A DNA stretch of 56,619 bases. It comes from Macrostomum lignano. Lineage: Eukaryota. The first letter of the stretch is position 1, and every line of letters starts with the position of its first letter. Of this stretch, positions 15,436 through 54,550 are shown piece after piece. The notes beneath the pieces were generated by a model. That model saw only the letters and a list, made by a program, of their open reading frames with translations. It was not told where the DNA came from and ran no database searches. The position numbers and the translations under genes were made by a program. The stretch covers positions 1-56,619 of the forward strand of contig NIVC01004176.1 of assembly GCA_002269645.1 (NCBI GenBank), in the 5' to 3' direction.

Positions 15436-16175
15436 TCACTCGAATTTCGTCCGCTTAGCCGGCGGTCCTTCGCTGTGCCGCCGATCGCCAAAGCCACCGC
15501 CTCGGCCGCCGCCGCGGTCAAAGCCGCCGCGACCGCCGCCGCGGTCAAAGCCGCCCCGACCGCCGCCGCGACCGCGGTCAAAGCCGCCACCGCGACCTCC
15601 GCGTCCACGGTCAAAGCCACCGCGACCGCCACCCCGCCCGCGATCAAAGCCGCCGCCGCGGCCGCCACCGCCTCGGCCCCTATCGAAGCCGCCCCGACCG
15701 CGGTCCCCGCCGCGTCCGCCCCTGCCGCCCCTCGGAGCGCCGCGCGGCTGCGGCAGAAACCTGGCTAACGGCAGCAGCTTCATGGAGTCGATGAACACCT
15801 TCGTGTCCTTGCCGAGCGACTGGCACTTCACGCCGGGCGCCATCTTTACGGAGAAGTACGCGTCCTTGATGGGACCGAATATCTCGTCCACCTTGCCGAT
15901 TTGCTCCTTGTTCTCCAGGAAGATGGCGCATTGAAGTAGGGAATCTTCTCGTGCGTCAGCTTGCACACCATGTCCTCCACGCACGGCTGCATGAAGTAGC
16001 CGACCTCGTCCACGCTGGCCGGCGGGCCCTGGTCCTCGTACCGGCCGCCGCCTCCGCCACCGCGGCCGCCTCGGAAACCGCCGCCTCGGAAGCCGCCGCC
16101 GCGACCTCCGCGAAATCCGCCACCGCCGCCGCGACCTCCTCCGCGACCGCCGCCGCCACCGCCTCTGAATCCCAT
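15436..16175 (-). CDS. GAR1: H/ACA snoRNP subunit GAR1 (single coding exon; one apparent 1-nt deletion near 15927)
   Basis: N- and C-terminal RGG domains flank the core [64 protein letters not shown]. The span is 740 nt, one short of an open frame; adding one C (gcgcc[c]atc) joins the two ORFs. Probable 47-nt 5'UTR intron 16224-16178 (GTAAGC...TTGCAG). Confidence 0.97.
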
Positions 16176-16300
16176 GGCTGCAAGCGACAAGTTGAATGAA
16201 TAAAAAACTGATGTTGCTGCTTACGGCAGGCAACAAGTTATAAAATAATTTCTTCTTATCACTCAATGAAGCAGGCGACAAAAAACGAATCAATATCCCA

Positions 16301-20900: not shown

Positions 20901-21707
20901 AATCTAGTCAACAGAGAGCAAGATGGATTGCTAATCTAGTCAACAAAGAGCAAGATGGATTGCTAATCTAGTCAACAAAGAGCAAGATGGATTGCTAATC
21001 TAGTCAACAAAGAGCAAGATGGACTGCTAATCTAGTCAACAAAGAGCAAGATGGATTGCTAATCTAGTCAACAGAGAGCAAGATGGATTGCTAATCTAGT
21101 CAACAAAGAGCAAGATGGATTGCTAATCTAGTCAACAGAGAGCAAGATGGATTGCTAATCTAGTCAACAAAGAGCAAGATGGATTGCTAATCTAGTCAAC
21201 AAAGAGCAAGATGGATTGCTAATCCAGCCAAAACAGCTCGCACGCAATGTGAGCTTACCTGCTCAGGCTGTGCGCCAGTCCCAGCTGCATAGCCGCCATC
21301 TCTCGCGGCGCCACCTGGGGCAGCAGGGCGTCTATTTGGGACCGGATCGCCCGCACCAGCTCCATCACGGCCGAGCTGCACACGCAGCCGATGCCCAGCT
21401 TCTCCTTGATGGCGCTGCCCAGCCGAGAGTCGGCAACGCCGAGAACTCCGTCGAGCACTTCGGTGGTCTGCAGTTTGCGCAATGCCTTGCGCAGCTTCTT
21501 GCTGATGCGGCCCTCCAGCAGGGAAGTGGTGGCTGCCAGGGCCTCCGTAATGTCATCGAACTTGACAAACTGACACAGCTGAACGGCCGAGGCGGCGGCG
21601 GAGGCGTCGGCAAAGTCGCCGAGCACATTCTGGCTCTCCACTAGCCGCTTCTCGTCTAGCACCTTGAAGATGGCGAAGCCGGCGGAGGACTCGAGTAGCA
21701 CTAGCAT
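17929..21707 (-). CDS. NOP58: Nucleolar protein 58 (box C/D snoRNP core), 4 exons
   Basis: Exons 21707-21259, 20603-20360, 19982-19221 and 18093-17929 with GT-AG sites. [29 protein letters not shown]|[37 protein letters not shown], Nop domain [72 protein letters not shown] and a Lys-rich tail. Confidence 0.96.
18230..19120. repeat. 21-bp minisatellite (CCACACTGATCCCATGGAGTC) in NOP58 intron 3
   Basis: Read directly. Confidence 0.95.
20010..20292. repeat. 23-24-bp minisatellite (CATGCTGGGGATGGGATTGGCGTA) in NOP58 intron 2
   Basis: Read directly. Confidence 0.95.
20745..21225. repeat. 32-bp minisatellite (GAGCAAGATGGATTGCTAATCTAGTCAACAAA) in NOP58 intron 1
   Basis: Read directly. Confidence 0.95.
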
Positions 21708-21959: not shown

Positions 21960-22465
21960 GCGTCATGTCAAACATAAAATAAGTCATGTCAGACAAAATA
22001 AGTGACGTCAAACATAAAAAAGTCATGTCAGACATAAAATAAGTCATGTCAAACATAAAAAAAGTCATGTCAGACAAAATAAGTGACGTCAAACATAAAA
22101 AAGTCATGTCAGACAAAATAAGTGACGTCAAACATAAAAAAGTCATGTCAGACATAAAATAAATCATGTCAGACATAAAATAAATCATGTCAGACATAAA
22201 ATAAGTCATGTCAGACATAAAATAAATCATGTCAGACATAAAATAAATCATGTCAGACATAAAATAAGTCATGTCAGACATAAAATAAGTCATGTCAGAC
22301 ATAAAATAAATCATGTCAGACATACAATAAGTCATGTCAGACATAAAAAATAAGTCATGTCAGATATAAAATAAATCATGTCAGACATAAAATAAGTCAT
22401 GTCAGACATAAAATAAGTCATGTCAGACATAAAATAAGTCATGTCAGACATAAAAGAAGCGTCAT
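21960..22465. repeat. 21-bp minisatellite (GTCATGTCAGACATAAAATAA) upstream of NOP58
   Basis: Read directly. Confidence 0.93.
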
Positions 22466-27135: not shown

Positions 27136-30100
27136 CAACAAACACAACAGAGTACGCTGCCAGATCACAAAAGCAGCGTCAGATGGCGCGCTTCAAAGCT
27201 TGGGCGCGAACAAAAGCCGCACCGCCGGCAGAGTCCGGGGCGCCGGCGTCAGCCAGCAGACAGTCGACGTAGCGCCGAGTCCTCGCCTGTCCCCGCCGGT
27301 AGGGTGCCTGCAACGTAAGTAGCAGCACCTCCTGCACCGGCTCCGGGCAGTAGGCCTCGGCGCGGATGACGTGGCCTGCCAGCTGGAGTCGCCGACGGCG
27401 CAGCAGATCGCTAGGACGGGCCAGGCCGGCGCGATGATAGAGCGCCGTGTTGGTGACTCGCTCGTTGCCGATCTTGAAGGCGGCGCGCAGCAGGCCAGCG
27501 TGCGCCGCGTCGACTTGAGCCTCGAGCGAGTCTGTCAGCGTCCAGGTCTCGGCGTTGTATAACAGGACGGTCTCGATCACCGCCTGGAACAGCGCCGCCC
27601 TCTGGCGGTCCGGTAGGGCCTCGGACTGCAGGACTGACCTTATGGAACGAAAGGCAGCCCAAGCAAGTCCTCGGCGACGCCGCAGATCCTCGCGGACGTC
27701 GGGAACCAGACCGCCGAGGTAGACGAACTGCTGACATCTTGGAAGCTCACTCGCCTGTCCGTCAGCGCATCGGCAGAAGATTGCAGCCTCGGTGTCGTCC
27801 GGCACGCATAGCACGACGGTCTTCTGCGTGTTGACCACCAGGCCGACGCTCGCCGCAACGGCAACCAGCCTATCCAGCTGTCGTTGGGCGCCCTCGACGG
27901 TCGAGGACAGCAGGGCGAGGTCATCGGCGTAGCCAAGCACGCTGAGCCGTCTCTCCGGTTGGCGTCGACCCACGCGTCGCCGCAGCAGGAAGCCGTCGTC
28001 GTTGGAAGGCAGAGCAGTCCGTAGCACCCAGTCAAGCACCAGAATAAATAGGAACGGCGCTAGCGTATCTCCCTGGAGCACCCCGGAGGATGTCTCGAAG
28101 AAATCCGATAGGCCGTCCGGTGTTGAGACAGCAGCCGTCGTGCCGTGGTACAGCGCCATGACAGCAGAAATCAGCAGCTCTGGCACGTTGTACGCACGGA
28201 GCACCTCTGGGAGCGCGTCCCTCACGACCGAGTCAAAAGCCTTCCTGAAATCGACGAAGATCAGGATCAGGGTCAACTGGCGGATGCGCGCCTCCTCGAT
28301 GACTCGTCGAAGAGCCAGGATCTGCGTCACTGTGCCGCGATGGGGCCGGAATCCGTTCTGCTCAGGTCGCAGGTACGGGTCCAGCACAGGCTGTAACCGC
28401 GATAGCAGCATGCGGTTGAACAGCTTCGCGGCGCAGGACTGTAGGCAGATGCCTCGATGCTCCTCGAGCTTGGTGGTGCCCGGCTTCTTTGGAATGGCGA
28501 CGATGTGCGCCGTGGTCCATTCGTTTGGCGCCACCTCACCGAAAAGCACGCGGTTCATCACTCTGGCGACCTCAGTGGCCACGCAGTGGATCCGCAGCGC
28601 CTCGGTGGGCACCTCGTCCGGACCAAGCGCTTTGCCGCCCGGCGACTGCCGAGCGAACTTCACAACGTCGGCTGTGCTGACTGGGGCAACATTGAAGCTC
28701 TCCTCCGCCGGCAACGGCGTCTCCGGCGGCAGCCTCAGATTTTCTGGAAGCGGAGGGGGCGGCGCGTTGACAATGGCGGCGAAGAACTCGCGCAGCTCGT
28801 TCCTGCGCTCGTCCGGAGTGTCGCCTGCCAGGTTGAGCGCGATGCGCCGCTTTCGCCCCGTCAGAGTGTTGATGGCGGACCAGGCCACGCGCCCTCTGGC
28901 ATCGGGCCCTGCGGCAGAGACGGCTTGGATGGCGTCATCGACAGCGGACTGCTGCCGCTGCAGGTAGACAGCCGCCAGAGCCTCCTCCGCCTCGCGAGTT
29001 GGCCGCCCACTCAGACGGAGCCTCTCCAGATCTTCCTCGCTTCGTCGATCGCGGGGTCGTCCTGCCAGACCGGCTGCCCGCGCTGGGCCGGTCGCATCAG
29101 CGGGACTGCTTGCTCCGCAGCGGCTCGAACTGCAGCGCTCACCTCCGCGTACTCGGCTCCTCCACGCTTGTCGCCCAGCGCAGTGACAAAGGCACCGGCA
29201 AAGCGACGTCGCGTCTCGGCGTCCCTGAGCGCGCGGTAGTAGCGCCGCGGTGGCCGCTTTGGCGGACGGTAGAGCGGGTCCCGAAGCCGAAGGTCGCAGA
29301 TGAGCAGCCGATGGTCGGACCGCAGAGCCAGCGGCGTAATGGTGTGGCAGTTGGTGACGCGGCGGCGCTCACGAAAGCGCACAAGCACGTGGTCGAGCTG
29401 TGCCAGCCTCCGCGTAGCGTTCCGGCCACGCGAGTTCCGCCGCCTCCGCTTGCAGCCCACGAAGGTCGCGAACCTGCCCGGCGACTTGCGGAATCTGGTC
29501 TTAATTTATTTGCAGTCTTAATTTATTTGCAGTCTTAATTTATTTGCAGTCTTAATTTATTTGCAGTCTTAATTTATTTGCAGTCTTAATTTATTTGCAG
29601 TCTTAATTTATTTGCAGTCTTAATTTATTTGCAGTCTTAATTTATTTGCAGTCTTAATTTATTTGCAGTCTTAATTTATTTGCAGTCTTAATTTATTTGC
29701 AGTCTTAATTTATTTGCAGTCTTAATTTATTTGCAGTCTTAATTTATTTGCAGTCTTAATTTATTTGCAGTCTTAATTTATTTGCAGTCTTAATTTATTT
29801 GCAGTCTTAATTTATTTGCAGTCTTAATTTATTTGCAGTCTTAATTTATTTGCAGTCTTAATTTATTTGCAGTCTTAATTTATTTGCAGTCTTAATTTAT
29901 TTGCAGTCTTAATTTATTTGCAGTCTTTATTTATTTGCAGTCTTAATTTATTTGCAGTCTTAATTTATTTGCAGTCTTAATTTATTTGCAGTCTTAATTT
30001 ATTTGCAGTCTTAATTTATTTGCAGTCTTAATTTATTTGCAGTCTTAATTTATTTGCAGTCTTAATTTATTTGCAGTCTTAATTTATTTGCAGTCTTAAT

Positions 30101-34594: not shown

Positions 34595-35276
34595 TGATGG
34601 AGAAACTGCAAGTCAATCTCTATAGAGAATTCTATTCGAAAAACTGGTCTCTTGCGATCGAAATTATCCTTTAAAAAGAGGAAGCACTACATGAACCGAA
34701 GTCATAGTAATAACTATTTTAGAAATGCAATACGAAAGACTTTAGCTCGTATAGTATTTAATACAAGCTTCAATCGAATTAAAACAAATAAACTGTTAGA
34801 ACGAACCCTATTTTAACCTGGACCTGATTGATTCATTAGCGCAATGCCATATATATGGGCACTACAATTGCAGTATAAAACTTGTTTCCTTCTGGTTTGC
34901 TAGTCTGCCAAGCAAATTGACCTAGAAAATTATCGCCTGATCTCACGCCTGAGTAAAATTTAACTGGCGAGTTCTGCGCATAAGTAAGCATTCATGCAAC
35001 TGGATCGGCACTCATTTAACGCGTGATAGCGACGTTGCGCCAAAGAGCGTTATGGTAGTTCGGTCTTTTACTCGTATTGCTTGGAGAGGCACTTTAAAGT
35101 CTTATCGATTCGGTGCCAGTTTTCAGGTGCCGAAGACACTGGACTGCGTCACTTTCTTTAACGCGGTGATAATATTTAAACTCTAAAAAAACGCAAAGTA
35201 TGAAAAGCGCGCTGGCTCAGCTGATTTCGCCGCTTTTAAAATTAGAAAAATAATCAGAAAATTTGACACTATCAAA

Positions 35277-38179
35277 ATGAAAGAGCCAATTGAACTGAAG
35301 TCGATTGTCACCGAGCGGAGACTGCTGAAGTATCCCGAAGTGTTCGGTAGTTTGGACCGAGGTAACTATACGCAATAGGCCGTATGAATAAAATGAGCAA
35401 TTGCTCAGACTCACACAAAATCTCAAGTCAGTATGAAAAAACGGAGCAGTGACTTCCGAGCAACAGCTCATTAGTTTTGACTTGAAAGTTGTTGTTCCGA
35501 GTGTCAGCGAAAAAATCCGGGGCTGAGCAAACTCTCCGGTCTGTATGAATAAACTCGGGCCATAGACAATCTTTTCTGAGCTGCAACTCACAAAATGTTG
35601 AGGCAGCCCTCTGCCTGCCTCAGCCATCTAGCTCGTATACTCTAGTGGTTGCTGTAACTAGCGCTTTCTAGTTGCTGATGTTCTTTGATTGAGTTCTTTG
35701 GCAGTATGGCTGAGTTCTTTGCTGCACGTGCTCCCGCTCGACGGAAGTTCTATCCGGAGCGCCGATCTTCCGACTTGACTAGAGACACGGAGTATGGTCG
35801 ACTCTACCGATTTTCTCGCACCAACGTGCAGTATCTGGCCGATTATAAAGAAGCTCAAGGGGAAAACAGAAAGAAGGATTCTACATAAAACACAAAGCAT
35901 ATACTCGTAGCATACTCTTAGAAAACAACATTTTTGTCTATGGTTCAAAGTATCGCAATATTGGAGTTACAACTCTGAGACCAAAAGTCTGAACTCTGAC
36001 TAGGAGTCCCAACTTTATTCATACTGACCTTGAGCAGATGCTCCGACTCGGAGCAAAATCTCAGACCTGAGCAGTAGCTCAGTCTCAGCGTTTAAGCTTG
36101 AACTCGCAAGTTATTGCTCATTTTATTCATACGGCCTAGGTCAAATGTCAAGGGAAATTAGAACTTAATTCAACTACGAGCGTAGGCTATGCCGAAGCTT
36201 TCAGCCTTGTAGTACACTAATTATCCTAACATAAAACCCAAGAAAAATGAGCATGGGTCCATGGCAGGCCATCAATACCATCTGCTATCGAGTATTCGCC
36301 ATTGGACGATTTTTTCCAAACTTTTCCCAGGATGTTCTCTTACAAAGGTTTTGTACGTGAAGCCCGTTCCCGAGAAGCCCGAGAAGGTGTCGCTTGAAAT
36401 GGCAGTTTATGCCAATAGCGACTTTGAACACGTGCTCGACTGGCTCGTTGCCAGGGCAACCGAAGAGGGCGTCACTAAAACTGCCAGACGAAAGTTTCGC
36501 GTCACTGGTGTCGGCGGTGAAAAGTTCAAGAATGAAATTGCAGCAACGACCTGCATGGGGTGAGTTATTTCGTGAGCCTTGGCTGATAGACTTGACGTTT
36601 ACATGTAGATGGTGGGTGATCAGCTATTTTTGCACATTGCGCCAACAGGATTGAATTCGTGGACGAGATCATGAGCCACCAGACCGGAGGTCACTTCCTG
36701 CTGAACAACTATGAAGACGACGTCTTTTGCTATGCGGATGGGCGGACAGCGGAGGAATCCAAGCCACCTGTTGAACTGCCACCGTGGATTGCTGCCTTGC
36801 AGAGTCGCATTGATGAGATTTTCACGTCGGCTGATGGTCATCGGCTGCCAGTGATCTTTGGTTTCTGTGGATCCGGCACAGTCATAAACAAGGTGCGCGT
36901 GCTTCAAAACAGTGTCGAAACTGCCTCATGCAAAGGTTTGGCTCTCAGTTCCATGTTGCCGTTTTGATTTAGTTTGAAGCGGCTTTTTAATTTCAGAAAA
37001 GCTGTAGTTGCTGTCTGTAGTGATCGAGAGACAAGCCGGTTAGGTCTAGTCTATTAGAAGAAGTTGGGTGCAAGTTGTCCTGCTTGTCCTGCTTGTCCTG
37101 CATATATATTCGCTACAATGAGAAGAGAAGCACACCTCGCATCTCGTTTCGATTTTCCCTCCAGCTAAATGAGGACGGTACAGCTGATATGCTCGGCGTC
37201 CACTGGTTCGGTGGCAAGAGCTTCCTGGGACTGTCGCACATGTTACTGGGCACAAACAACTATGATGAGATCATGGAGCTGGCTGCCAGAGGTGACAGGG
37301 GTAATGTGGACACTCAGGCGAAGGAGATGATCGATCAGGACGCCAAAGCCGAGTACAGGATGCTACCCGGCGATTTTCCGATGTTTCCGTTCGGCAAGTC
37401 ATCAGAGGGCGCCAGTAAGTTCCAGAGCGAATACTTTAAAGCTCCAATATTTCTTTCAAAAGACTCGAATGCCTGATTCGGATGTAGCATGACTATCGAC
37501 AAAAGTAAATCCGACAATTTTGAGCAGTTCCGACTGGCAGTTTTCGCCGCGAAGACGTGGCTGCGGCTGTGGTCGGTTGCATAGTCTCCGGCCTGCTGAC
37601 CCAAGTGGCCGCCTACTGCAAGTTGCACCGCATTCGCAGAGTCTACCTTGGCGGAAACTTCTTCCGAGCCAAAGTGGCCAGAGACATTCTGAGGGACTGT
37701 GCTGAAACTGTGCCGACCTATGTAAGGCTTGTCATTGGTTATAAAACTGACATAGCTAATCACTTTTCTGGGATTTTGCGCTCATGAAATTGTTCTGGAG
37801 TTCAGTTTCTGAGTCACATCGCTCTGAGGTTTATGCGCATGCATATGGAATAAGATTTGCTTGTAGATTTTTTAACGAAAGAACCAGTGAAACTCGTACT
37901 TTGTTTATTTGAAGTTGTGAATATTGATTGGTGAAAGTGACTCAAAAGGAAGTTCTTTGCTACCTACTTTAGCAAGGACTAATTAAGTAGTTAAAGTAGT
38001 TTATGTGCTCTAGTTAATGCGTTATCCACAGCAAGTAATCCATTTCATTGCAGCGGCCTCTGCGCTTCCATTTCATGTCCAACGGCCACACCGGCTGTCT
38101 GGGTGCCTTGCAGGCGTCGGCTGCGGACGCCGCGGAGATGCGGGCCAAGCTGAGCTCCATGAAGGTGGATGAGAAGTGA
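35277..38179 (+). CDS. Divergent type II pantothenate kinase (fumble/PanK)-like protein, 6 exons
   Basis: Phase-compatible exons 35277-35361, 36331-36559, 36649-36892, 37165-37414, 37528-37721 and 38054-38179. They yield SLDR|GCSLTKVLY, VTGVGG, FVDEI, FCGSG, FGGKSFLGLSHMLLG, AARGDRGNVD, REDVA, VYLGGNFFR and NGHTGCLGAL, collinear with PanK motifs. Confidence 0.85.
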
Positions 38180-40171
38180 ACATCTTCGCTGCAAGTGTCG
38201 CGCACTTGCACGGCGAAAAATGATGATGCTGTGACTTTAAAATGCGTGAATGAAATAAAATCGTGACTGCTCGACTGATCGACGTGATGGAGCTGAGTAT
38301 CTAGCCCGCGCTTTGTAAAATTTAGAAATTCAGTGACGTACAAACATAGAGTTTGTCTGACTCTTCTCATAGATGAAGCCATGAAATTTTTATCCGAAAC
38401 AAATTTCTGAGGGATAATTTGTGCCTGACTTATTTAAGCCCAAAATCGGCCCCTTCGGGCAAAATGTCTAAGTTAAACGATGTCACACGAAGCATGCGTT
38501 CTGTCGCCAGCTGGTTTAGTAGCTTCCAAATTAATGATCAGCAGCATTTTCCGGCTTTAAAGAAACATTTTACGCCAGAGTAACCCGGAATTTTCCGATC
38601 CCGGGATCCCGGACCTGCTCATAAGACGTTTCAGGATATCCCGGACTTAGGGGCCGACTCCCGGGCTCTCGGATCGACTTCCCTGTCAATTGTTAAGTAG
38701 GCTCGTATATTCATTCCCAAGGCTAATCGGAAAATCCATGATTTAATAGCTAACTTTGAACAAATCAATACAAAGCAAATTTGTTCAAAAAAAGATGAAT
38801 CAAAAACCAAAAACAATCCAAGGCGTTCTAAATTACCGCCTTGGCATAAAGTAGTTCAAAAATTACCTGGCGATGGGGTTGTCCGGACAGGGAAGTGACA
38901 CTCCCCCCCAAAAATAGGGCCCTGGTGAACCAGGCCAAGCCAGTTGGTTTCCAAAAATTTGCTTGGTAAGAAAAATTTGCTGTGTGCACAGAATTGTCTG
39001 TGATTTTGAAATAGCAATAACAGATTTTGACAATGTTGGTCTCGTTTTAAAGCTCAGAATAAATTTCCACAACTGACACAAAAATGAGCACGAGTTCAGA
39101 ACTTATGTGACACGAAAGTTAAAAGATAGGATTTTTAGCATGCTAGAAAATTGAACTTGAAAGTTGTGATGCAGAAAATCTTTGATTTTTATTTAGTCGT
39201 ACAACTTGGTTTTTGTAGAAAGTAACCCCTTTCAATTGTCGCCAGTTTCTTTAAAATTCGTTAAAAAATAAGAAAGTTTCAGAATATTGTAGTTTTGGAG
39301 GTGCCTCCAGTGTTCCCAAGCTGGGAGCTTAGTAAAGATTTCGGCTATATTGATCCAAAAAGTATGTTGCAGGAAGGACGGAAAAGTTTCCGTTGATTCT
39401 TCGTACCTTTGTTTATCCAACGAGTTGGCTGGGAACTTCGAAATGGATTGAGAAGTTTGCCAAGTCGATAGATCGTAAAGTCAACAGATTCAGAAAGCGA
39501 TCACAGAGGATGCGATTCGGGGATAATTTCTTAAAATTACGTTGTTACAGTGAATTTAAAATTGCCTCGATGAATATATGGGAATCAAATTGAAGGAAAG
39601 AGTTTAAAACTATTTCAGAAAAGATGTCGGCTTCAAATTACGAGTAAATGTCTCGTATTTCGTAAACTTTGTTGGTTTAAATTGGAATTGTAAAATCGTT
39701 GCTGAAGTACTCGTAGACTTTCGGTCTGCCTGTAAACCAGATCGAATATTAACAAAATAGTAATACATGGGGGTAATTTTTATATGTAAAAGCGCGTCAT
39801 AATCATGAGTCTTTAGGCTAATCTTCACTTGATCAAAGCTCTATTGCAGTTTAGCAGTAGAAATTTTTATGGAACGCATTGTGGTTGAAATGGTAGAAAA
39901 TACTCGTAGCTTGGTATTTCTACTTTCAAGTCGCAGTTCGTTGAAAATAAAAAAGCTGATCAGCTGACTTAAATAATAATAGAAGCGCTTTTAAATGTCG
40001 AATGCAGGTAGTACTGTTACTCGTGGGTAGTAGTATCGCAATGTAGTTAGGGCTCGGAGTTAGGATAGATTCGTGCTTCAAGCAAAATTTTGGTACATTG
40101 CTGCTAGCATAAAAAATTTGAAATTTGACCACTACAGGCCAAGCCAAGCCTGCTTAAAGGTACGCGTGAGC

Positions 40172-42775
40172 TCAGACAGCGGAAAACAACAAAGAATTAG
40201 AAACTGCAAGGCGATCTACTACATTTAGGAGAACAGAATGCAGAGTCCAGAATGCCGTGGTCGCGATCGCGCAGTTCTTCTCCACGACTGGTCGGACCGA
40301 AGGATCGGTCACAATCTGTTTGAGCTCCGAGCTCAGTGGTCGGAACACGGTCACTCCGCTAAGCAGCAGGCACTGCAATGCCCCGCATGGATGGGTTCTA
40401 ATCTCATTTGCTGGTGCGTGTCATATGCTCGTAGCTACACATTTGTCCTACAGCATGTCCTGCGTTTGTCCTACAGCATGTCCTGCATTTGTCCTACAGC
40501 ATGTCCTGCATTTGTCCTACAACATGTTCTGCATTTGTCCAACAGAATATCCTGCATTTGTCTTTAAAGCATGTCCTGAATTTGTCCTACAGCATGTTCT
40601 GCATTTGTCCAACAGAATATCCTGCATTTGTCTTTAAAGCATGTCCTGAATTTGTCCTACAGCATGTCATGCATTTGTCCTACAGAATTTCCTCACCATT
40701 CCGAAAATGACTGCGGCCAGCATCATCAGCATCGGCTTCTGTCGCGCAAGCCAAGGTACCGGACGACCCACTCTGGATGCAGAGAAGATCAGATGGACGC
40801 GAAGGGTCTTCACCAACTGACTCGCGTAGCAAGCAGTCAGGCTGAGCTGGAATGCGCAGTTCAAAGCATTGCACATTACGTGCGAGCTGTCTACAGCGAA
40901 CAGACCGAGACACGCTAGACCGAGGAGGTTCCCACACATGCACGTGACGGACAAGTGTATCGACGAGGCCTTGATGAGCTTGTGGTGTCGACGGTTGATG
41001 AACAGAGCGAGCACGACGACCAGGAAGATCGAGAGTAGAGCGAGACATGCCAGCAGCACAGGAAACTGCAGTCCGTCTCTCCACGCGTACACCGGTATCG
41101 ACTCGCAGCTCAGCCGGTCTTGACTGGGCCAGTGAAACTCCGAACACGACAGACACGACTTGCCATCATCCGACACGATCTCCTGTTTGAAGCACGGCTT
41201 GCACATAAAGCAGCAAGCATCTGTCTCCAACTTGATCTCGCCAGCACTGCACGGAGCACTGCAGAATGACTTTGGCAGTTCCGACTGAGCTGCATGCTGA
41301 TCGGAGCTCGAGTTCTGCCACCATCGAATAGGTGTGAGGTCGCTCAACGTAAGACCGGCTGACTCCATCCACGTTCCGACCTTCACCAGCTGACCGTCCG
41401 GCTGCTCCTGACGAATCTCGTAGGCCGGCGACCCGTCACCGTTCGAGTCGAAGCTCACGTTTCCGGTTCGCATGAAAGGGAAGCTGGAGTTCGCAAGCAG
41501 CTTCATCACCTTCGGACCTGTGACACATGCACTCACAGCCGTAACATTCGGCCACTTTGTCGCGCAATCGACCAGAGCGACACGCTCGATACACGAGACC
41601 AGAATGTTGATTGAGTCCAGAAGTCTTGCGACAGGAGCCACCTCAGAGTCGATTGATAGACTCGACTTTGAGCCGACTCTACAACTGCCGTCAGAGCAGC
41701 ACGATGCAGCGCTATCCAATGTGCAGTTGAACAGAAGTCGGAGCAGTTGTTCACCGAACGGATAGCCGAGGACCTCAGATCCGTTCAGTGAGTGGTAAAA
41801 CTGGATGAGGTCGGGCGTGGCGAACTTTGTAAACGAGGTATAGATGGCACCCGTGGTGAAATGTTTGTAGGCAACGGAATTCGCATCCGTTGTGATGATA
41901 ACTCCTTTTCTGCTACTTATCGCTTGGAGTAAGAATTCTGGAATGCTACTAAAGGTATCGAATACAAGAAAGCCACGCAGGTGGGGGTACTGACTCATCT
42001 GGGTGTCGACATCCTCCTTTGTCAAAAACATGTTGATAGGTAAAGTGAAAGCCACGCACACTGTCTGACCGAATTTGCTACTTTGCTGAAGCAGTAGACG
42101 CGTGTTCTGGAGCAGTCCTCTACCGTACACATCGTCTCTGTGCACGATTCCTACCATGGTCCAGTTGAAGTACTGCACGAGGTGTACGACTGCCTTGGCC
42201 TGGTAGCTGTCAGGAGCTACTTGACGGAACACGTTGGGGTAGAGCGTCTTGTCCGACAGAGCATCGCTGCTGCACTCGTTTCCGACCTGCGGCATGGAGT
42301 AGAGAGACAGCTGACGGGACACCAGCTGCGTCTCGCTGCTACGCCAGCCCGACACGACGGCATGAACGAAGTAGAACTTTTCTCCGAGGCTGGACACTAC
42401 CTGGTCGCAGAATCCGGCAGCCGCATCAAGGCCGGTCGGGTGTGTCCATGCCGGCCTAATCCGCTTCAGCATGTCCACCAGACGACGGTCCAGGTAGCAC
42501 GGATCAAGATGGAGCAGACCGAGGCGGAGATTGCGACTGGTCCATTTCGCATTGATGAGTTTAGCAGCGTAGTGCGGTGCCAGATTGCGCAGAAAAATTT
42601 GTTCGCTTATCATTGAATTGAGAGTGTCACAGTATTTATTCACACTTTGCAGAACGGCTAAGTTGATGAGGCCGTTCGGGACGCATAGCACCTGTCCAGG
42701 GTGGTACTGCACATTCTGCGCTGTAACTGTGTGTAAAAGATAAAGCGCAACAACTGTGGTTGCTGAGAGGGCCAT
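40172..42775 (-). CDS. Class C GPCR (metabotropic glutamate receptor-like), copy 1; truncated at the start of TM5
   Basis: Exon 42775-40697: signal peptide, Venus-flytrap (PQV...LSDKTLY...APDSYQAKA, WTMV, YGR), cysteine-rich domain (PKSFCSAPC..CCFMCKPC) and TM1-4. Exon 40372-40172 matches copy 2 only down to 40243, then reaches a stop after unrelated sequence. Confidence 0.88.
40440..40690. repeat. 23-bp minisatellite (ATTTGTCCTACAGCATGTCCTGC) in the GPCR copy 1 intron
   Basis: Read directly; the counterpart at about 52265-52465 has a different unit arrangement. Confidence 0.9.
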
Positions 42776-45499
42776 CGTTGCTAAAAATTTGCTAGTTTTT
42801 TCCGTTAAGACAGAAGAAAGAGGCAGTCCGTTTTGGCAGTTCAATTTTATGTTGAGCCCGAGACTGCCAGCAATTGGCTGCTGGCCAACCCGTGGGCGCC
42901 TTTCATCGGTTCAATTTTTATAGGCTCCTATTGTGCGACTCTGATGGAGATGGTTTCTGTCGTGGAACCGGATAGAGCTGGCTGACGAAGGTTTTTAGCT
43001 GAGTGATGTATGCGATCTTGGCTTTTACCAGAGTGTCAAACAGTCTAAGAGGAAATATAATTTACTAGCGTATGCAACCCAATAGGTAGCTATAAATTTG
43101 TCTCTTCGTTTGCGGATACAGGGCCATAAGGTCTAACGCAAACACTCAACTCATGATCCTTCCGATCTCTCTCGGCCTCATCAACCACTCATCAGTCTCT
43201 GCGACAGTTAACCAGGTCCAACCAGCTACAGGTGAGAGCTCGCCAAAAGTAAACAGCCCTGTACATTGTTCAAGTTTGGCCAGATAAAACAGAGGAAGAG
43301 AGCGAAAAAGATCTTTTAGCCTAAAACAGGAAAATTTAGTGAGCCAGCAAATATCGTATCAGCATGGCATTCCCCCCTATTGGGCCTGAGCTCTAGCAGG
43401 CCGGTCATCAGGCCCTTTGCGCATGATGCAGCAGATTCGGACAATGAAGAGCAAAGGCTGGATGAATGCTCCTCTCAGTCATTGCTTCACCGGTGTCATT
43501 TGCTATGTCCCATTTAGAATAGAGCTTGGCCGAATGATTTTTGCTAGCCAAGTTTGCAGCTCATTGCGGGTGATTCTGAGTATTACTTGGGATTAACTTG
43601 GATGTAAAAAGTCTGATATATGCCAACACTGATGACTTTGCGCACCCAAAACAAAGCAACTCGAAAACCTACAAAATGGTTTATACAAACGACCAAATGC
43701 TTGTTCCTGTCTTAGCGGGTGTAGCTCGTACTCAAAGTTTTACTTTTACCTGTTTTAATTAGTTTAAAAAGTTACTCGAGACAATTGTGTCGCTTAGGCC
43801 ACTCTATTGTGGGATCGTTTCGTGGTGTGGCAGTTCGGTCCTGTAACAGTTTTTTATATGACAGCTTGGTCATGTAACCTTCTTTCGTGTGACATTTCGG
43901 TCATAACCCTTTTGTCGTGTGGCAATTTGGTCATGTACTCGTATATCACCAAAACTGCATCAGTCAGCGATATTTGAAAACTACACAATAACAAGAGTTT
44001 GAAAACTTATTGGTGAGAAAATATTTTGAACGCCTGTATGCAAGTTTCATGTGAACACTTAGCTAGATCAGAGCCGTGCGGCATTAGGCAGCTCCACCAG
44101 TATCGCAGCAGTACTGCTGTCGCAGATCTTGGGTGTTGATGTCAGCAGTTTTCGTGTGAGCTTGACGCTCTAAGTGCAAGCCAACTTCATCAGGCTGAAT
44201 TTCTCCGTTTTTCGCTTGTGCATACCATTAGGCTGGCAAGCACAATGAACTTCCGTTTTGCACTGGTCTTGCTGTCCTGAGATGATCTGTTGATTGTCGA
44301 TGTTCGTGCTGCTGAGATCGTTGATGCTGCTTCTGCTGCTGCTGTTGTTTTTGTTGTTATTGACGGGCCCAGCTGGGTCACCTGGTCATTGGGCCGACGG
44401 GGACGGTCTAGCTGCAACATGGCACAGCCAGTCGTCATTGTCCCGCTCGCCTCTGGACAGGGGCCTTGCACCACCGCGTCGCCGCGCAAGTGTGCAGAGG
44501 GCATGTCGGCGAGCTTGCCACCAGGTCCACCAGGGTCAACCCCAGCGGAACCGTAATACCAGCTTTCGTGTCCGTAGCCAGCGGACCTTCCACGCCACGC
44601 CTGACAGTCCAGCACCGGCGGCCAGCCCCGATGGGGTCTAGCCAGTGTCTGGAGCTGCTCAGAGGCCTGCTGGATGTGAGGCTGCTGCTGCTGCTGGTGT
44701 AAGCCGAACTAAGTTGGGTGTGCCTTAGACAGAGGCTAGCGTTCGCAACGTTGGCGCCTACTTTTTAACTTTGGTCCCCTCGCTCCAGGCTCACGTTGGG
44801 TCCTCTCGTTGCCGTCCAGCCTCGGCCAGGTTACACGACCAGGTGCCCTAGGCCTAGCCTAATTCCGGTTCCTAATCCTAATCCTATCAACATTTTCCTA
44901 TGGCTCATAAGGCTATTCGTCATTTCGTAGGAAATTTTATTGTTCGCCAAAATACATTGAACAAAAGATCACTACAAGCTCGAATGTTTATTTTAGTTTA
45001 TTTATTTGTCCGAGATTTCGTCAACCGGGGTAAAAAAGAGTCTGCTACAGCTTCTTGTAAATTGTTCTCTGGATTGTACGAGGCGAGAATTCATATTTAC
45101 TAGCCTCCCAAGTGAGTCGGGGCAGCAGTTGAAGCTGCGCTGAGTACATTGCACAAGGGGAGAGCGAGGTGCAGCGGAAAGCAAAGAGAGACGCGTCGTC
45201 AGAGTTGACGATGCCCCTTGGCGTTTGAAAAGCACGCACCTGCAGTACAATAGCAACCCCCAACCCCGATCTAGCGACCAGTGTACACACGTACACTACA
45301 AAGGTTAGAGAGCAGATCAGTGTGCAAGACAACCCTAGCCACGTACACCCGATGGAAGGCGCCGCAGTTACACTTGTCCTCTTTTGAATGCATGACTTTC
45401 ATACCGCATGTAGCGAGGGTAAAGAAAGCATTAATACATTTGCTAGTGTATTAATGTTTGCACGGTAGACGTTAGGATTGGACCCAGTGTGATACCAAC

Positions 45500-51730: not shown

Positions 51731-54550
51731 CTAAGACCTTGATGCCATAACGGTAGTAGCAGGGTTATTGGTGTAGAACTGGATGTTGTTCTCTGCCTCG
51801 GGCCTCGCGTACACTGCGTACAGCTTCGGAGCGAACAGGATCGACAGCAGCAGCGCGTGCGTGAGGCTGGACGAGAACGCAAGCAGCAACATTGCGGTAG
51901 TCAGAGAGCTGGCCGAAAGAGCGGACGGAACGAACGCCGACCACAAGAAGAGGCCGGACACTCCGCAAGCCAGGATGCACTTGGTGTCGTGAAAGTTGTC
52001 CGGAAGCGATCGGGTCTTCAGCGACAGGCCGCACGTGACAGTCAGGATCAGCAGGTTGCAGCACAGCGGAGTCCAGAATGCCGTGGTCGCGATCACGCAG
52101 TTCTTCTCCACGACTGGTCGGACCGAAGGATCGGTCACAAGCTGCTTGAGCTCCGAGCTCAGTGGTCGGAACACGGTCACTCCGCTAAGCAGCAGGCACT
52201 GCAATGCACCGCATGGATGGGTTCTAATCTCATTTGCTGGTGCGTGTCATATGCTCGTAGCTACACATTTGTCCTACAGCATGTCCTGCGTTTGTCCTAC
52301 AGCATGTCCTGAATTTGTCCTACAGCATGTCCTGCATTAATCTTTAGAGCATGTCATGCATTTGTCCTACAGCATGTCCTGCATTTGTCCTACAGAATAT
52401 CCTGCATTAATCTTTAAAGCATGTCCTGCATTTGTCCTACAGCATGTCCTGAATTTGTCCTACAGAATTTCCTCACCATTCCGAAAATGACTGCGGCCAG
52501 CATCATCAGCATCGGCTTCTGTCGCGCGAGCCAAGGTACCGGACGACCCACTCTGGATGCAGAGAAGATCAGATGGACGCGAAGGGTCTTCACCAACTGA
52601 CTCGCGTAGCAAGCAGTCAGGCTGAGCTGGAATGCGCAGTTCAAAGCATTGCACATTACGTGCGAGCTGTCTACAGCGAACAGACCGAGACACGCTAGAC
52701 CGAGGAGGTTCCCACACATGCACGTGACGGACAAGTGTATCGACGAGGCCTTGATGAGCTTGTGGTGTCGACGGTTGATGAACAGAGCGAGCACGACGAC
52801 CAGGAAGATCGAGAGTAGAGCGAGACATGCCAGCAGCACAGGAAACTGCAGTCCGTCTCTCCACGCGTACACCGGTATCGACTCGCAGCTCAGCCGGTCT
52901 TGACTGGGCCAGTGAAACTCCGAACACGACAGACACGACTTGCCATCATCCGACACGATCTCCTGCTTGAAGCACGGCTTGCACGTAAAGCAGCAAGCAT
53001 CTGTCTCCAACTTGATTTCGCCAGCACTGCACGGAGCACTGCAGAATGACTTTGGCAGTTCCGACTGAGCTGCATGCTGATCGGAGCTCGAGTTCTGCCA
53101 CCATCGAATAGGTGTGAGGTCGCTCAACGTAAGACCGGCTGACTCCATCCACGTTCCGACCTTCACCAACTGACCGTCCGGCTGCTCCTGACGAATCTCG
53201 TAGGCCGGCGATCCGTCACCGCTCGAGTCGAAGCTCACGTTTCCGGTTCGCATGAAAGGGAAGCTGGAGTTCGCAAGCAGCTTCATCACCTTCGGACCTG
53301 TGACACATGCACTCACAGCCGTAACATTCGGCCACTTTGTCGCGCAATCGATCAGAGCGACACGCTCGATACACGAGACCAGAATGTTGATTGAGTCCAG
53401 AAGTCTTGCGACAGGAGCCACCTCAGAGTCGATTGATAGACTCGACTTTGAGCCGACTCTACAACTGCCGTCAGAGCAGCACGATGCAGCGCTATCCAAT
53501 GTGCAGTTGAACAGAAGTCGGAGCAGTTGTTCGCCGAACGGATAGCCGAGGACCTCAGATCCGTTCAGTGAGTGGTAGAACTGGATGAGGTCGGGCGTGG
53601 CGAACTTTGTAAACGAGGTATAGATGGCACCCGTGGTGAAATGTTTGTAGGCAACGGAATTCGCATCCGTTGTGATGATAACTCCTTTTCTGCTACTTAT
53701 CGCTTGGAGTAAGAATTCTGGAATGCTACTAAAGGTATCAAATACAAGAAAGCCACGCAGGTGGGGGTACTGACTCATCTGGGTGTCAACATCCTCCTTT
53801 GTCAAAAACATGTTGATAGGTAAAGTGAAAGCCACGCACACTGTCTGACCGAATTTGCTACTTTGCTGAAGCAGTAGACGCGTGTTCTGGAGCAGTCCTC
53901 TATCGTACACATCGTCTCTGTGCACGATTCCTACCATGGTCCAGTTGAAGTACTGCACGAGGTGTACGACTGCCTTGGCCTGGTAGCTGTCGGGAGCTAC
54001 TTGACGGAACACGTTGGGTAGAGCGTCTTGTCCGATAGAGCATCGCTGCTGCACTCGTTTCCGACCTGCGGCATGGAGTAGAGAGACAGCTGACGGGACA
54101 CCAGCTGCGTCTCGCTGCTACGCCAGCCCGACACGACGGCATGAACGAAGTAGAACTTTTCTCCGAGGCTGGACACTACCTGGTCGCAGAATCCGGCAGC
54201 CGCATCAGCGGTCGGGTGTGTCCATGCCGGCCTAATCCGCTTCAGCATGTCCACCAGACGACGGTCCAGGTAGCACGGATCAAGATGGAGCAGACCGAGG
54301 CGGAGATTGCGACTGGTCCATTTCGCATTGATGAGTTTAGCAGCGTAGTGCGGTGCCAGATTGCGTAGAAAGATGGATTCTGTGAGCTTCGCTCCAGGTG
54401 TGTCGCAGTAGAACTGTGTGCTCTCTAATACGGCTAAATTAATTATTCCGCTTGGGATGCACAGTTGCTGTCCGGGAAGGTACGTGACAGTTTGAGATGC
54501 AAGTCAAGAACTAGAGTATAAGCAATTGCAGCTGCTGTCAGTGAAGTCAT
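51731..54550 (-). CDS. Class C GPCR (mGluR-like), copy 2; complete 7TM, with apparent 1-nt frameshifts
   Basis: Exons 54550-52477 and 52198-51731. TM5-7 present (KTRSLPDNFHDTKCI, LFAPKLY). ATG 54550 gives MTSLTAAAIAYTLVL..QTVTYLPGQQLCIPSGIINL after a 1-nt correction; a second 1-nt loss lies at about 54016. Confidence 0.85.

What the first reader, a model, noticed from the sequence alone, without database searches (positions are those of the whole stretch)
35277..38179. Intact but strongly rewired pantothenate-kinase-fold enzyme
Seen: six exons splice into an open frame collinear with type II PanK. Compared with the canonical eukaryotic motifs (established): DIGG(T/S)LxK becomes DRGCSLTK, ATGGG becomes VTGVGG, NIGSG becomes FCGSG, KRVTGTSLGGGTF becomes DMLGVHWFGGKSF, and HEGYFGAVGA becomes NGHTGCLGA. 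The catalytic DE is kept, but the Arg that binds pantothenate and the small pocket-lining residues are replaced by bulky ones. Inference: a lineage-specific PanK-like kinase with a different substrate, or with altered acetyl-CoA feedback.
Basis: partly seen in the sequence, partly recalled or inferred. Interest (0 to 1): 0.7.

Follow-up and report, generated by a model that had tools for sequence, protein, structure and literature searches.

The report
Divergent pantothenate-kinase-like gene in a flatworm
This is an intact, transcribed flatworm (Macrostomum lignano) gene for a pantothenate-kinase-fold protein that keeps the ATP site and catalytic glutamate but has lost nearly every pantothenate-binding residue, and it belongs to an uncharacterised multi-copy family also found in other invertebrates and in environmental eukaryotes.

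Summary
Six GT-AG exons (35277-38179, + strand) give a 375-aa protein identical to the GenBank model BOX15_Mlig003467g1 of Macrostomum lignano. It has the PanK fold: Pfam Fumble E=3e-28, AF2 pLDDT 84, and all top-50 Foldseek PDB hits are type II PanKs.

It fails the curated PanK equivalog model (99 bits against a cutoff of 248). It lacks Arg207, Ser195, Tyr254/Tyr258, Ala269 and Trp341, which are 95-100% conserved in 64 canonical PanKs. [quoted passage not shown]

The rewiring is not a one-off. It defines a clade ("class D"), with:
- at least six named M. lignano paralogue groups;
- four genes in the annelid Owenia and one in a nemertean;
- mRNAs in soil metatranscriptomes and a contig from a coral-associated sample.

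The clade has its own near-invariant Arg (R321). No characterised member or paper was found.

The best reading is an active ATP-dependent kinase with a non-canonical acceptor that escapes classical acetyl-CoA control. A pseudo-enzyme or heteromer subunit is the main rival. Whether M. lignano also has a canonical PanK could not be tested.

Interest is moderate: a new variant of a known kind.

The parts
35277..35361 (+). Exon 1 (ATG at 35277; residues 1-28 plus the first base of G29). Holds the start of the PHOSPHATE 1 motif (D27 at 35355-35357).
   Evidence: Donor is G|gtaact. Identical to the GenBank model.
36331..36559 (+). Exon 2 (residues 29-105). Holds the rest of PHOSPHATE 1, G29-K34 (K34 at 36345-36347), and the VTGVGG motif.
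   Evidence: acceptor cccag|GA, donor GG|gtgagt. D27, G29 and K34 are invariant in the 22-sequence family alignment.
36649..36892 (+). Exon 3 (residues 105-186). Holds D110-E111 (36662-36667; E111 corresponds to the catalytic Glu138 of PANK3) and PHOSPHATE 2 G179-S180-G181 (36869-36877).
   Evidence: The Glu is kept in 92% of core class D, 100% of outer class D and 100% of canonical sequences.
37165..37414 (+). Exon 4 (residues 187-270). Holds M195 (37189-37191) at the Arg207 position, K204 (37216-37218) at the Gly216 position, the GNVDT motif, the lengthened flap (residues 240-260) and the FPFGK motif.
   Evidence: The flap has low pLDDT, 55-66.
37528..37721 (+). Exon 5 (residues 270-334). 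Holds the REDVA motif, the ADENOSINE motif G311-G312-N313 (37650-37658) and the clade-specific R321 (37680-37682).
   Evidence: The Arg is present in 100% of core and 84% of outer class D. It aligns with an Arg of S. aureus type II PanK.
38054..38179 (+). Exon 6 (residues 335-375 plus the stop TGA at 38177-38179). Holds the NGHTGCLGA motif, with H346 at 38087-38089 in place of the canonical Tyr.
38254..38259 (+). AATAAA, the likely polyadenylation signal, about 75 nt after the stop codon (inferred).
   Evidence: Read directly from the sequence. Not tested.

Best explanation
The gene encodes a cytosolic protein of about 42 kDa (estimated from its 375 residues) with the type II pantothenate-kinase (Fumble, ASKHA) fold. 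It belongs to a distinct, uncharacterised eukaryotic clade, here called class D.

Shown:
- The fold is that of a type II PanK.
- The ATP-binding elements are kept: PHOSPHATE 1 (D27..G29..K34), PHOSPHATE 2 (G179-S180-G181) and ADENOSINE (G311-G312-N313).
- The catalytic base is kept (E111, corresponding to Glu138).
- The residues that hold pantothenate, and the pantetheine arm of acetyl-CoA, in PANK3 have been replaced wholesale. These include Arg207, Ser195, Val268'/Ala269', the flap residues Ile253/Tyr254/Tyr258, and Arg306'/Trp341'.
- The clade has its own conserved residues: Arg321, and Lys or Arg at the Gly216 position.

Inferred:
- It is an active ATP-dependent phosphotransferase. E111 would deprotonate a hydroxyl on a small-molecule acceptor that is not pantothenate bound in the canonical pose.
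- K204 and/or R321 may supply the positive charge that Arg207 gives in canonical enzymes.
- It is not subject to classical acetyl-CoA feedback.
- The many paralogues, with variable pocket residues, suggest diversified acceptors.
For: - Gene model and identity to the transcript-derived GenBank annotation.
- Fold: Pfam Fumble E=3.3e-28. AF2 model pLDDT 83.8, pTM 0.84. All top-50 Foldseek PDB hits are PANK1/2/3, Cab1 or S. aureus PanK.
- Not a PanK equivalog: TIGR00555 scores 99.4 bits against a cutoff of 247.6. Ten other class D members score 51-136 bits. The canonical controls score 332 and 358 bits.
- Column statistics on 64 canonical, 25 core and 19 outer class D sequences. R207 is 100% in canonical sequences and absent in class D. 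S195 (98%), Y254 (95%), A269 (100%) and W341 (95%) are all lost. D27, G29 and K34 are 100% kept, E111 92-100%, and G179, S180, G203 and G312 92-100%. R321 is in 100% of core and 84% of outer class D.
- Residue roles are taken from PMC8366970 and PMC6199309.
- Purifying selection: the paralogue Mlig022685 has the same six-exon layout. dN/dS is about 0.24-0.26 at saturated dS. The query keeps every invariant residue of the 22-sequence alignment.
- Clade breadth.
Against: - No biochemical data exist for any clade member.
- The acceptor-pocket positions are variable rather than re-fixed. That is also what relaxed constraint on a pocket no longer in use would look like.
- The catalytic Glu also has structural contacts in canonical PanKs, so keeping it does not prove catalysis.
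- Model coordinates could not be inspected. The spatial roles proposed for K204 and R321 are guesses.
- R321 aligns with an Arg in S. aureus PanK, so it may be an ancestral, nucleotide-side residue rather than a substitute for Arg207.
Confidence: 0.5

Rival explanations
1. Pseudo-enzyme or regulatory subunit. The protein still binds nucleotide but no longer phosphorylates a small molecule. It would act as a scaffold or regulator, or as one half of a heterodimer with a paralogue or with the canonical PanK. Parallels are the apicomplexan PanK1/PanK2 complex, the mammalian PANK4 kinase-like domain and mycobacterial CoaX.
For: - All pantothenate-contacting residues except the Glu are lost, and the pocket positions are not re-fixed across the clade.
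- There is precedent for seemingly non-functional PanK homologues that work only in heteromers (PMC8366970).
- Several paralogues coexist in one genome. The more degenerate ones, Mlig027024 and Mlig007788, have eroded P-loop or C-terminal motifs.
- In phmmer scores the query is closer to PANK4 kinase domains (57-73 bits) than to PANK1/3 (39-45 bits).
Against: - The three ASKHA nucleotide motifs and the catalytic Glu are kept at 92-100% across the clade. Apicomplexan PanK2 has deviating nucleotide motifs.
- No paralogue in the table keeps the complementary Tyr254/Tyr258 flap that would complete a shared canonical site.
- There is no DUF89 domain.
Confidence: 0.25
2. A genuine pantothenate or pantetheine kinase working in CoA synthesis, possibly the worm's working PanK. 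It would bind its substrate in a different way, with K204 or R321 replacing Arg207.
For: - The fold, the ATP site and the catalytic base are those of PanK.
- A basic residue at the Gly216 position occurs in about 70% of class D, and R321 is near-invariant.
- The presence of a canonical PanK in M. lignano was not verified.
- Lacking the carboxylate-binding Arg would fit pantetheine, which has no carboxylate (inference).
Against: - It scores far below the curated PanK equivalog cutoff.
- Residues that are 95-100% conserved in canonical PanKs are all changed.
- At least six divergent paralogue groups is hard to reconcile with one housekeeping step.
- The flap that closes over the dimethyl group is 4 residues longer and of different sequence.
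Confidence: 0.15
3. A decaying duplicate (pseudogene) or an annotation or contamination artefact.
For: - The score against PanK models is low.
- A second database copy (UniProt A0A1I8HMX7, P0002) carries a frame-shifted stretch in exon 4.
Against: - The frame is open across six exons with canonical splice sites.
- The GenBank model is transcript-derived.
- All family-invariant residues are kept.
- The exon structure is shared with a 50%-identical paralogue, and dN/dS is about 0.25 or lower.
- It is embedded among ordinary flatworm nuclear genes.
- No prokaryotic genome carries the signature motifs.
Confidence: 0.03

Closest known systems
Eukaryotic type II pantothenate kinases (human PANK1-3, Drosophila fumble, yeast Cab1; Pfam PF03630, TIGR00555)
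   Same: - Same two-domain ASKHA/Fumble fold: Foldseek TM 0.62-0.70, all top hits.
[quoted passage not shown]
- Same catalytic Glu, and the shared GNVD and FGK motifs.
   Different: - Only 17-20% identity in the Foldseek alignments.
- 99 bits against the 248-bit equivalog cutoff.
- Arg207 becomes Met, Ser195 becomes Val, Tyr254 and Tyr258 are lost with a 4-residue flap insertion, Ala269 becomes Met, Arg306 becomes Ala, and Trp341 is lost.
- ATGGGA becomes VTGVGG, and GGG becomes GGK.
- There is an extra conserved Arg321.
PANK4 (kinase-like domain fused to a DUF89 4'-phosphopantetheine phosphatase)
   Same: - From my own knowledge of the literature, not tested here: in mammals the PANK4 kinase-like domain also lacks the pantothenate-binding Arg207 and is regarded as a pseudo-PanK.
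- PANK4 kinase domains give the best named pairwise scores to the query, 57-73 bits and 25% identity over the full length.
   Different: - The query has no DUF89/PF01937 domain.
- It keeps the catalytic Glu, which mammalian PANK4 has lost (my own knowledge of the literature).
- The fish PANK4 used here still has the canonical ER-x-GGSS-x-GGGTF and KEDEM motifs and passes TIGR00555 at 358 bits.
Apicomplexan PanK2, the divergent partner in the heteromeric PanK1/PanK2/14-3-3 complex
   Same: A divergent PanK paralogue that coexists with other PanK homologues and looks non-functional by sequence on its own (PMC8366970).
   Different: - There, the nucleotide-binding motifs deviate while Tyr254'/Tyr258' are kept.
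- Here, the nucleotide motifs are kept while the Tyr flap and Arg207 are lost.
- In the crude NJ tree class D falls outside the canonical clade.
Bacterial type II PanK (Staphylococcus aureus CoaW)
   Same: - Same fold (Foldseek TMt about 0.8).
- It shares an Arg aligned with R321 ('ALLRK'), and similar HGDRN-x-D and PGD motifs.
   Different: - S. aureus PanK keeps the Arg207 equivalent ('QRRVGG') and the GGG loop.
- The profile score is lower than to eukaryotic PanKs, 46 against 80-90 bits.
- No prokaryotic genome of 185,579 species carries the class D signature motifs.

Membership tests
Type II pantothenate kinase (EC 2.7.1.33; PF03630 / TIGR00555) | Fumble/ASKHA PanK fold | tested here: met
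   Pfam PF03630 E=3.3e-28, covering positions 4-329 of 334. AF2 model pLDDT 83.8. All top-50 Foldseek PDB hits are type II PanKs.
Type II pantothenate kinase (EC 2.7.1.33; PF03630 / TIGR00555) | [quoted passage not shown] | tested here: met
   D27..G29..S31..K34, G179-S180-G181 and G311-G312-N313 are present. The key residues are 92-100% conserved in the clade. Flanking residues differ: DRGC instead of DIGG, and FCGSG instead of NIGSG.
Type II pantothenate kinase (EC 2.7.1.33; PF03630 / TIGR00555) | Catalytic base Glu138 | tested here: met
   E111 aligns with Glu138, as D110-E111 opposite D137-E138.
Type II pantothenate kinase (EC 2.7.1.33; PF03630 / TIGR00555) | Arg207, which positions pantothenate (100% conserved in 64 canonical sequences) | tested here: not met
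   M195 sits at this position in two of three alignments, D194 in the gapped phmmer alignment to PANK1; neither is basic. No basic residue is conserved there anywhere in class D.
Type II pantothenate kinase (EC 2.7.1.33; PF03630 / TIGR00555) | Other pantothenate and flap contacts: Ser195, Val268'/Ala269', Ile253/Tyr254/Tyr258 | tested here: not met
   Ser195 becomes V183, Tyr254 becomes I242, Tyr258 becomes A246, Val268 becomes P258 and Ala269 becomes M259. The flap is 4 residues longer.
Type II pantothenate kinase (EC 2.7.1.33; PF03630 / TIGR00555) | Score above NCBI's curated equivalog cutoff | tested here: not met
   TIGR00555 scores 99.4 bits against a cutoff of 247.6. NF009842 scores 66 against 234. 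The controls score 332 and 358 bits.
Type II pantothenate kinase (EC 2.7.1.33; PF03630 / TIGR00555) | Phosphorylates pantothenate and is inhibited by acetyl-CoA | not testable with these tools
   Needs an enzyme assay or complementation.
PANK4-type protein (PanK-like domain plus DUF89 phosphatase) | C-terminal DUF89 (PF01937) domain | tested here: not met
   Only PF03630 is found in the 375-aa protein. The PANK4 hits carry PF03630 plus PF01937.
Apicomplexan-type heteromeric PanK subunit | Active-site residues split in a complementary way between two paralogues, which form a physical heteromer | tested here: inconclusive
   No Macrostomum paralogue in the motif table keeps the canonical Tyr254/Tyr258 flap or Arg207. 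The canonical PanK of M. lignano was not available. Physical association cannot be tested here.
Class D PanK-like clade (defined in this report) | Arg207 lost, Arg at query position 321, Lys/Arg common at the Gly216 position, flap insertion ending in Tyr250, nucleotide motifs and Glu kept, length about 360-420 aa, no other domain | tested here: met
   The query has all of these features. In the crude NJ tree it groups with the Macrostomum and environmental sequences, outside the canonical clade.

The most novel reading that the evidence does not exclude
Class D would be a previously unrecognised, old eukaryotic branch of the PanK fold. It would have kept the phosphotransfer machinery but replaced the whole pantothenate/acetyl-CoA pocket, and expanded to at least six paralogue groups in Macrostomum and four genes in Owenia. 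Its members would phosphorylate one or several acceptors other than pantothenate, giving new enzyme activities outside CoA synthesis, or a dedicated pantetheine-salvage kinase.
Probability: 0.4. Interest if true: 0.6.

Novelty: new variant of a known kind. Interest (0 to 1): 0.42.

Why it matters
PanK is the gatekeeper of coenzyme A synthesis. Its fold has so far been tied to one reaction, plus a few seemingly non-functional homologues: PANK4, apicomplexan PanK2 and mycobacterial CoaX.

A conserved, multi-copy clade that keeps the catalytic machinery but discards the vitamin B5 pocket would have two consequences:
- It would add a new substrate class, or a new regulatory use, to this fold.
- It would warn against automatic 'pantothenate kinase' annotation of Fumble-domain proteins in invertebrate and protist genomes.

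For M. lignano itself it is one of many unannotated gene families, so the immediate impact is modest.

Tried and rejected
- **UniProt automatic names of the paralogues** ('Glucokinase', 'FGGY_N domain-containing', 'Ppx-GppA domain-containing'). Rejected: all 22 family members hit only Pfam Fumble, and all top structural matches are PanKs.
- **Pseudogene or artefact.** Rejected.
- **Bacterial origin or contamination.** Two attempts failed because the alignments were too diverse. A four-sequence alignment gave two signature patterns with no confirmed hit in 185,579 prokaryotic species. The gene has spliceosomal introns, and the paralogue Mlig022685 shares its six-exon layout.
- **Word-index homology searches.** These were lossy. 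One search returned only Macrostomum-type sequences. One search, run with the profile, lost even members of the query alignment. One search (Owenia query) gave only Owenia paralogues and then canonical PanKs and PANK4. The exhaustive profile search was what revealed the clade.
- **Taxon of the environmental members.**
  - P0008 comes from poly(A) mRNAs in JGI samples I took to be soil metatranscriptomes.
  - P0017 comes from a run cited in a coral-microbiome paper.
  - P0020 comes from the unnamed assembly GCA_046766455.1.
  - None of these organisms was identified.
- **Literature.** No paper mentions Mlig003467, and none describes an Arg207-less free-standing PanK clade.
- **Expression tables.** The supplements of two M. 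lignano papers hold none of the paralogue IDs.
- **Canonical PanK in M. lignano.** No remaining tool could scan that genome or proteome.
- **Rfam.** Nothing in the window.
Full report

The region is eukaryotic. Translating the three forward frames of 35200-38300 and joining six segments at canonical GT/AG sites gives an open 1128-nt reading frame of 375 aa, ending in TGA. The segments are 35277-35361, 36331-36559, 36649-36892, 37165-37414, 37528-37721 and 38054-38179.

The ATG at 35277 is the first in-frame ATG. The product is 100% identical to GenBank 'hypothetical protein BOX15_Mlig003467g1, partial' of the free-living flatworm Macrostomum lignano. That record merely adds 16 residues read from the 5' UTR. 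The window length (56,619 bases) equals the length of that record's contig.

The GenBank annotation of this assembly was made from an RNA-seq-guided transcriptome (Wudarski et al. 2017, PMC5730564). The model therefore rests on a transcript.

The coordinates 35277-38179 are exact.

**2. What is it?**

*Fold.* Pfam finds only Fumble (PF03630), E=3.3e-28, across the whole domain. An AlphaFold2 model built on eight family sequences is confident, with mean pLDDT 83.8 and pTM 0.84. Its 50 best Foldseek matches in the PDB are all type II pantothenate kinases: PANK2, PANK3, PANK1, yeast Cab1 and S. aureus PanK. TM-scores are 0.6-0.8 at 17-20% identity. The fold assignment is solid.

*Not a canonical PanK.* The protein is far from canonical PanKs.
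- NCBI's equivalog model TIGR00555 ('type II pantothenate kinase') gives 99.4 bits against a curated cutoff of 247.6.
- Two canonical controls score 358 bits (a fish PANK4) and 332 bits (P0046).
- Ten relatives of the query score 51-136 bits.

*The wider family.* An exhaustive profile search of 1.84 billion representative proteins returned 1886 hits at E<=1e-3. A motif table from a MAFFT alignment of 123 full-domain hits splits them cleanly into two classes.

Canonical PanKs carry these motifs:
- DIGG[ST]LxK
- ATGGGA
- KxDE[ML]
- NIGSGVS
- ER[VI][SG]G[ST]SxGGGT[FY]
- DIYGG--DY
- SSFGK
- EG[YF][LF]GAxGA

The query and about 45 other representatives lack the Arg of 'ERV' (PANK3 Arg207) and most of the rest. 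I call this group class D.

*Column statistics.* These were computed on 64 canonical, 25 'core' class D and 19 'outer' class D sequences.

| Position (PANK3 numbering) | Canonical | Class D |
|---|---|---|
| Arg207 | 100% | most common residue is Met, at only 20% |
| Ser195 | 98% | no conserved counterpart |
| Tyr254 | 95% | no conserved counterpart |
| Ala269 | 100% | no conserved counterpart |
| Trp341 | 95% | no conserved counterpart |
| Gly216 | 97% | no conserved Gly; Lys or Arg in about 70% |

By contrast, the nucleotide site is kept (query numbering):
- PHOSPHATE 1 residues D27, G29 and K34: 100% in core class D.
- Catalytic Glu (E111, corresponding to Glu138): 92-100%.
- G179 and S180 (PHOSPHATE 2), G203 and G312 (ADENOSINE): 92-100%.

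*Why these positions matter.* The roles are documented. Glu138, Ser195 and Arg207 of one protomer, and Val268'/Ala269' of the other, hydrogen-bond pantothenate. Asp137-Tyr258' and Glu138-Tyr254' stabilise the site (PMC8366970). V250', I253', Y254', Y258' and A269' form the flap cavity for the dimethyl group. R306' and W341' lie at the regulatory dimer interface (PMC6199309).

In the query these positions are V183 (Ser195), M195 (Arg207), P258 and M259 (Val268/Ala269), M241, I242 and A246 (Ile253/Tyr254/Tyr258) and A298 (Arg306). The Trp is absent. The flap is four residues longer and is the least confident part of the model, with pLDDT 55-66.

*Class D's own signature.* An Arg at query position 321 is present in 100% of core and 84% of outer class D members. 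Canonical eukaryotic PanKs mostly have Met there. Lys or Arg occupies the Gly216 position in about 70% of members. The core group has His346 in 'GHTG'. The Arg321 position also holds an Arg in S. aureus type II PanK. It may therefore be an ancestral feature that canonical eukaryotic enzymes lost.

**3. How wide is the clade?**

*In M. lignano* there are at least six named paralogue groups:
- Mlig003467, the query.
- Mlig022685 (P0004, 49-50% identical).
- Mlig034563 (P0005, 33% identical).
- UniRef A0A1I8H9N6 (P0006, 32% identical).
- Mlig027024 (P0161).
- Mlig007788 g1-g3 (P0035 and relatives).

A seventh sequence, P0007, comes from an SRA transcript. Its 5' end is the last 24 nt of the M. 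lignano spliced leader, so it is from Macrostomum too.

*Outside Macrostomum:*
- The closest sequence (P0008, 344 bits) is a polyadenylated mRNA that recurs in several JGI samples I took to be soil metatranscriptomes.
- P0017 comes from a run cited in a coral-microbiome study.
- More distant class D members are four 'unnamed protein product' genes of the annelid Owenia fusiformis, three of them on one scaffold.
- One more is an 'uncharacterized protein' of the nemertean Tubulanus polymorphus.

*Tree.* In a crude NJ tree (BLOSUM62 distances, no support values) the canonical PanKs form one clade. The Macrostomum paralogues are interleaved with environmental sequences in another. This suggests the paralogues are old.

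*Prokaryotes.* No prokaryotic genome among 185,579 species carries the core signature motifs with a confirmed match.

*Literature.* I found no paper describing this clade.

**4. Is it under selection?**

Three lines of evidence argue against a decaying copy:
- The query keeps every invariant and nearly invariant residue of a 22-sequence alignment whose members are 23-50% identical to it.
- The paralogue Mlig022685 has the same six-exon layout. Its exon lengths are 82/226/232/250/188/111 nt, against 85/229/244/250/194/126 nt in the query.
- Pairwise dN/dS among the query, P0004 and P0003 is 0.24-0.26 by the Nei-Gojobori method. Synonymous sites are saturated (dS>1), so this is an upper bound.

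**5. How does it most likely work?**

*Shown:* the PanK fold, an intact nucleotide site, an intact catalytic base and a dismantled canonical pantothenate/acetyl-CoA pocket.

*Inferred, as the best explanation (confidence about 0.5):* it is an active ATP-dependent kinase. Its acceptor is not pantothenate in the canonical pose, and it is not under classical acetyl-CoA feedback. K204 and/or R321 may supply the charge that Arg207 gives elsewhere.

*A caveat.* The acceptor-pocket positions are variable within class D rather than re-fixed. This fits paralogues with different acceptors. It equally fits a pocket that is no longer used.

*Rivals:*
- Main rival (about 0.25): a nucleotide-binding pseudo-enzyme or heteromer subunit, by analogy with apicomplexan PanK2 and PANK4. 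Against it, apicomplexan PanK2 has deviating nucleotide motifs whereas here they are kept. No Macrostomum paralogue supplies a complementary canonical flap.
- A true pantothenate or pantetheine kinase with a new binding mode (about 0.15). This cannot be excluded, because I could not check whether M. lignano also has a canonical PanK. The capped search tools were exhausted, and none scans that genome.
- Pseudogene or artefact (about 0.03).

**6. Comparison with known families**

It works like, and folds like, a type II PanK. It fails the tests of membership in the PanK equivalog: Arg207, Ser195, the Tyr flap and the curated score. It therefore should not be named 'pantothenate kinase'.

It is not PANK4-type, because it has no DUF89 domain and keeps the Glu. 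Even so, PANK4 kinase domains are the best-scoring named relatives, at 57-73 bits against 39-45 bits for PANK1 and PANK3.

UniProt's automatic names for the paralogues (Glucokinase, FGGY_N, Ppx-GppA) are generic ASKHA labels. The data do not support them.

**7. Context**

The neighbours are ordinary nuclear genes with no link to CoA metabolism: a Nop56/58-like gene, a Gar1/Naf1-like gene, a reverse-transcriptase ORF and two class C GPCR genes.

**8. Verdict**

The gene is already annotated as a hypothetical protein with a Fumble domain, so it is not a new gene.

What is new is the recognition that its 'rewiring' is the signature of a conserved, uncharacterised, multi-paralogue clade. I rate this a new variant of a known kind, with moderate interest (0.42). 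Biochemistry, and a check for the canonical PanK, are the decisive missing pieces.

Noticed in passing
window 35376-36138 (intron 1 of the gene): A 763-bp element bounded by perfect 26-nt terminal inverted repeats (TAGGCCGTATGAATAAAATGAGCAAT). A second, imperfect inverted repeat is nested inside it (35538-35559 / 36008-36029). It looks like a MITE or foldback-type non-autonomous DNA transposon. There is no other copy of the repeat in the window.
   Followed up: partly
window 27179-28888 (- strand): A 569-aa ORF with a reverse-transcriptase domain (RVT_1, E=2.9e-29), so a retroelement copy. It lies next to an AT-rich stretch (22-26 kb, GC 0.29-0.35).
   Followed up: no
window 40667-42844 (-) and 52414-54054 (-): Two long single-exon ORFs about 10 kb apart, each encoding a class C GPCR (ANF_receptor + NCD3G + 7tm_3). 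This looks like a tandem pair of metabotropic-glutamate or taste-type receptor genes.
   Followed up: no
window 19146-20321 (-) and 15436-16293 (-): ORFs with a Nop domain (Nop56/58-like, E=1.3e-60) and a Gar1/Naf1 domain (E=1.1e-16). Two snoRNP-related genes lie close together.
   Followed up: no
window 21000-21231 and 21962-22459: Two minisatellites: a 32-bp unit repeated 7.2 times (96% matches) and a 21-bp unit repeated 24 times (88% matches). There is also a short 9-bp repeat, three copies, in intron 3 at about 37075-37101.
   Followed up: no
window 37169-37327 (exon 4, +1 frame), compared with UniProt A0A1I8HMX7 (P0002): The UniProt copy of this gene comes from another M. lignano gene set. 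It differs by three substitutions near residue 80. It also replaces about 30 residues of exon 4 with 'ACRTCYWAQTTMMRSWSWLPE', which is the +1-frame translation of the same exon. This means either a frame-shifted duplicate copy or an assembly or annotation error in that gene set.
   Followed up: partly
L009 1-24 (Logan SRR28338163 contig encoding P0007): The transcript starts with TGCGAAGACTCAATTTATTGCATG, which is the 3' end of the 35-nt M. lignano spliced leader. This paralogue is therefore SL trans-spliced. None of the other loci fetched carries the leader.
   Followed up: yes
Owenia fusiformis proteins P0027, P0171, P0040 and P0069: The annelid has four class D PanK-like genes. Three are on the same 34.9-Mb scaffold, which suggests local duplication. 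All are unnamed in GenBank.
   Followed up: no
P0033 (Periophthalmus magnuspinnatus, UniRef A0A3B3ZKT3): A fish 'uncharacterized protein' of 366 aa groups with canonical PanKs in the NJ tree. It has His in place of Arg207 and SGR in place of GGG. It may be a degenerate PanK copy or a contaminant.
   Followed up: no
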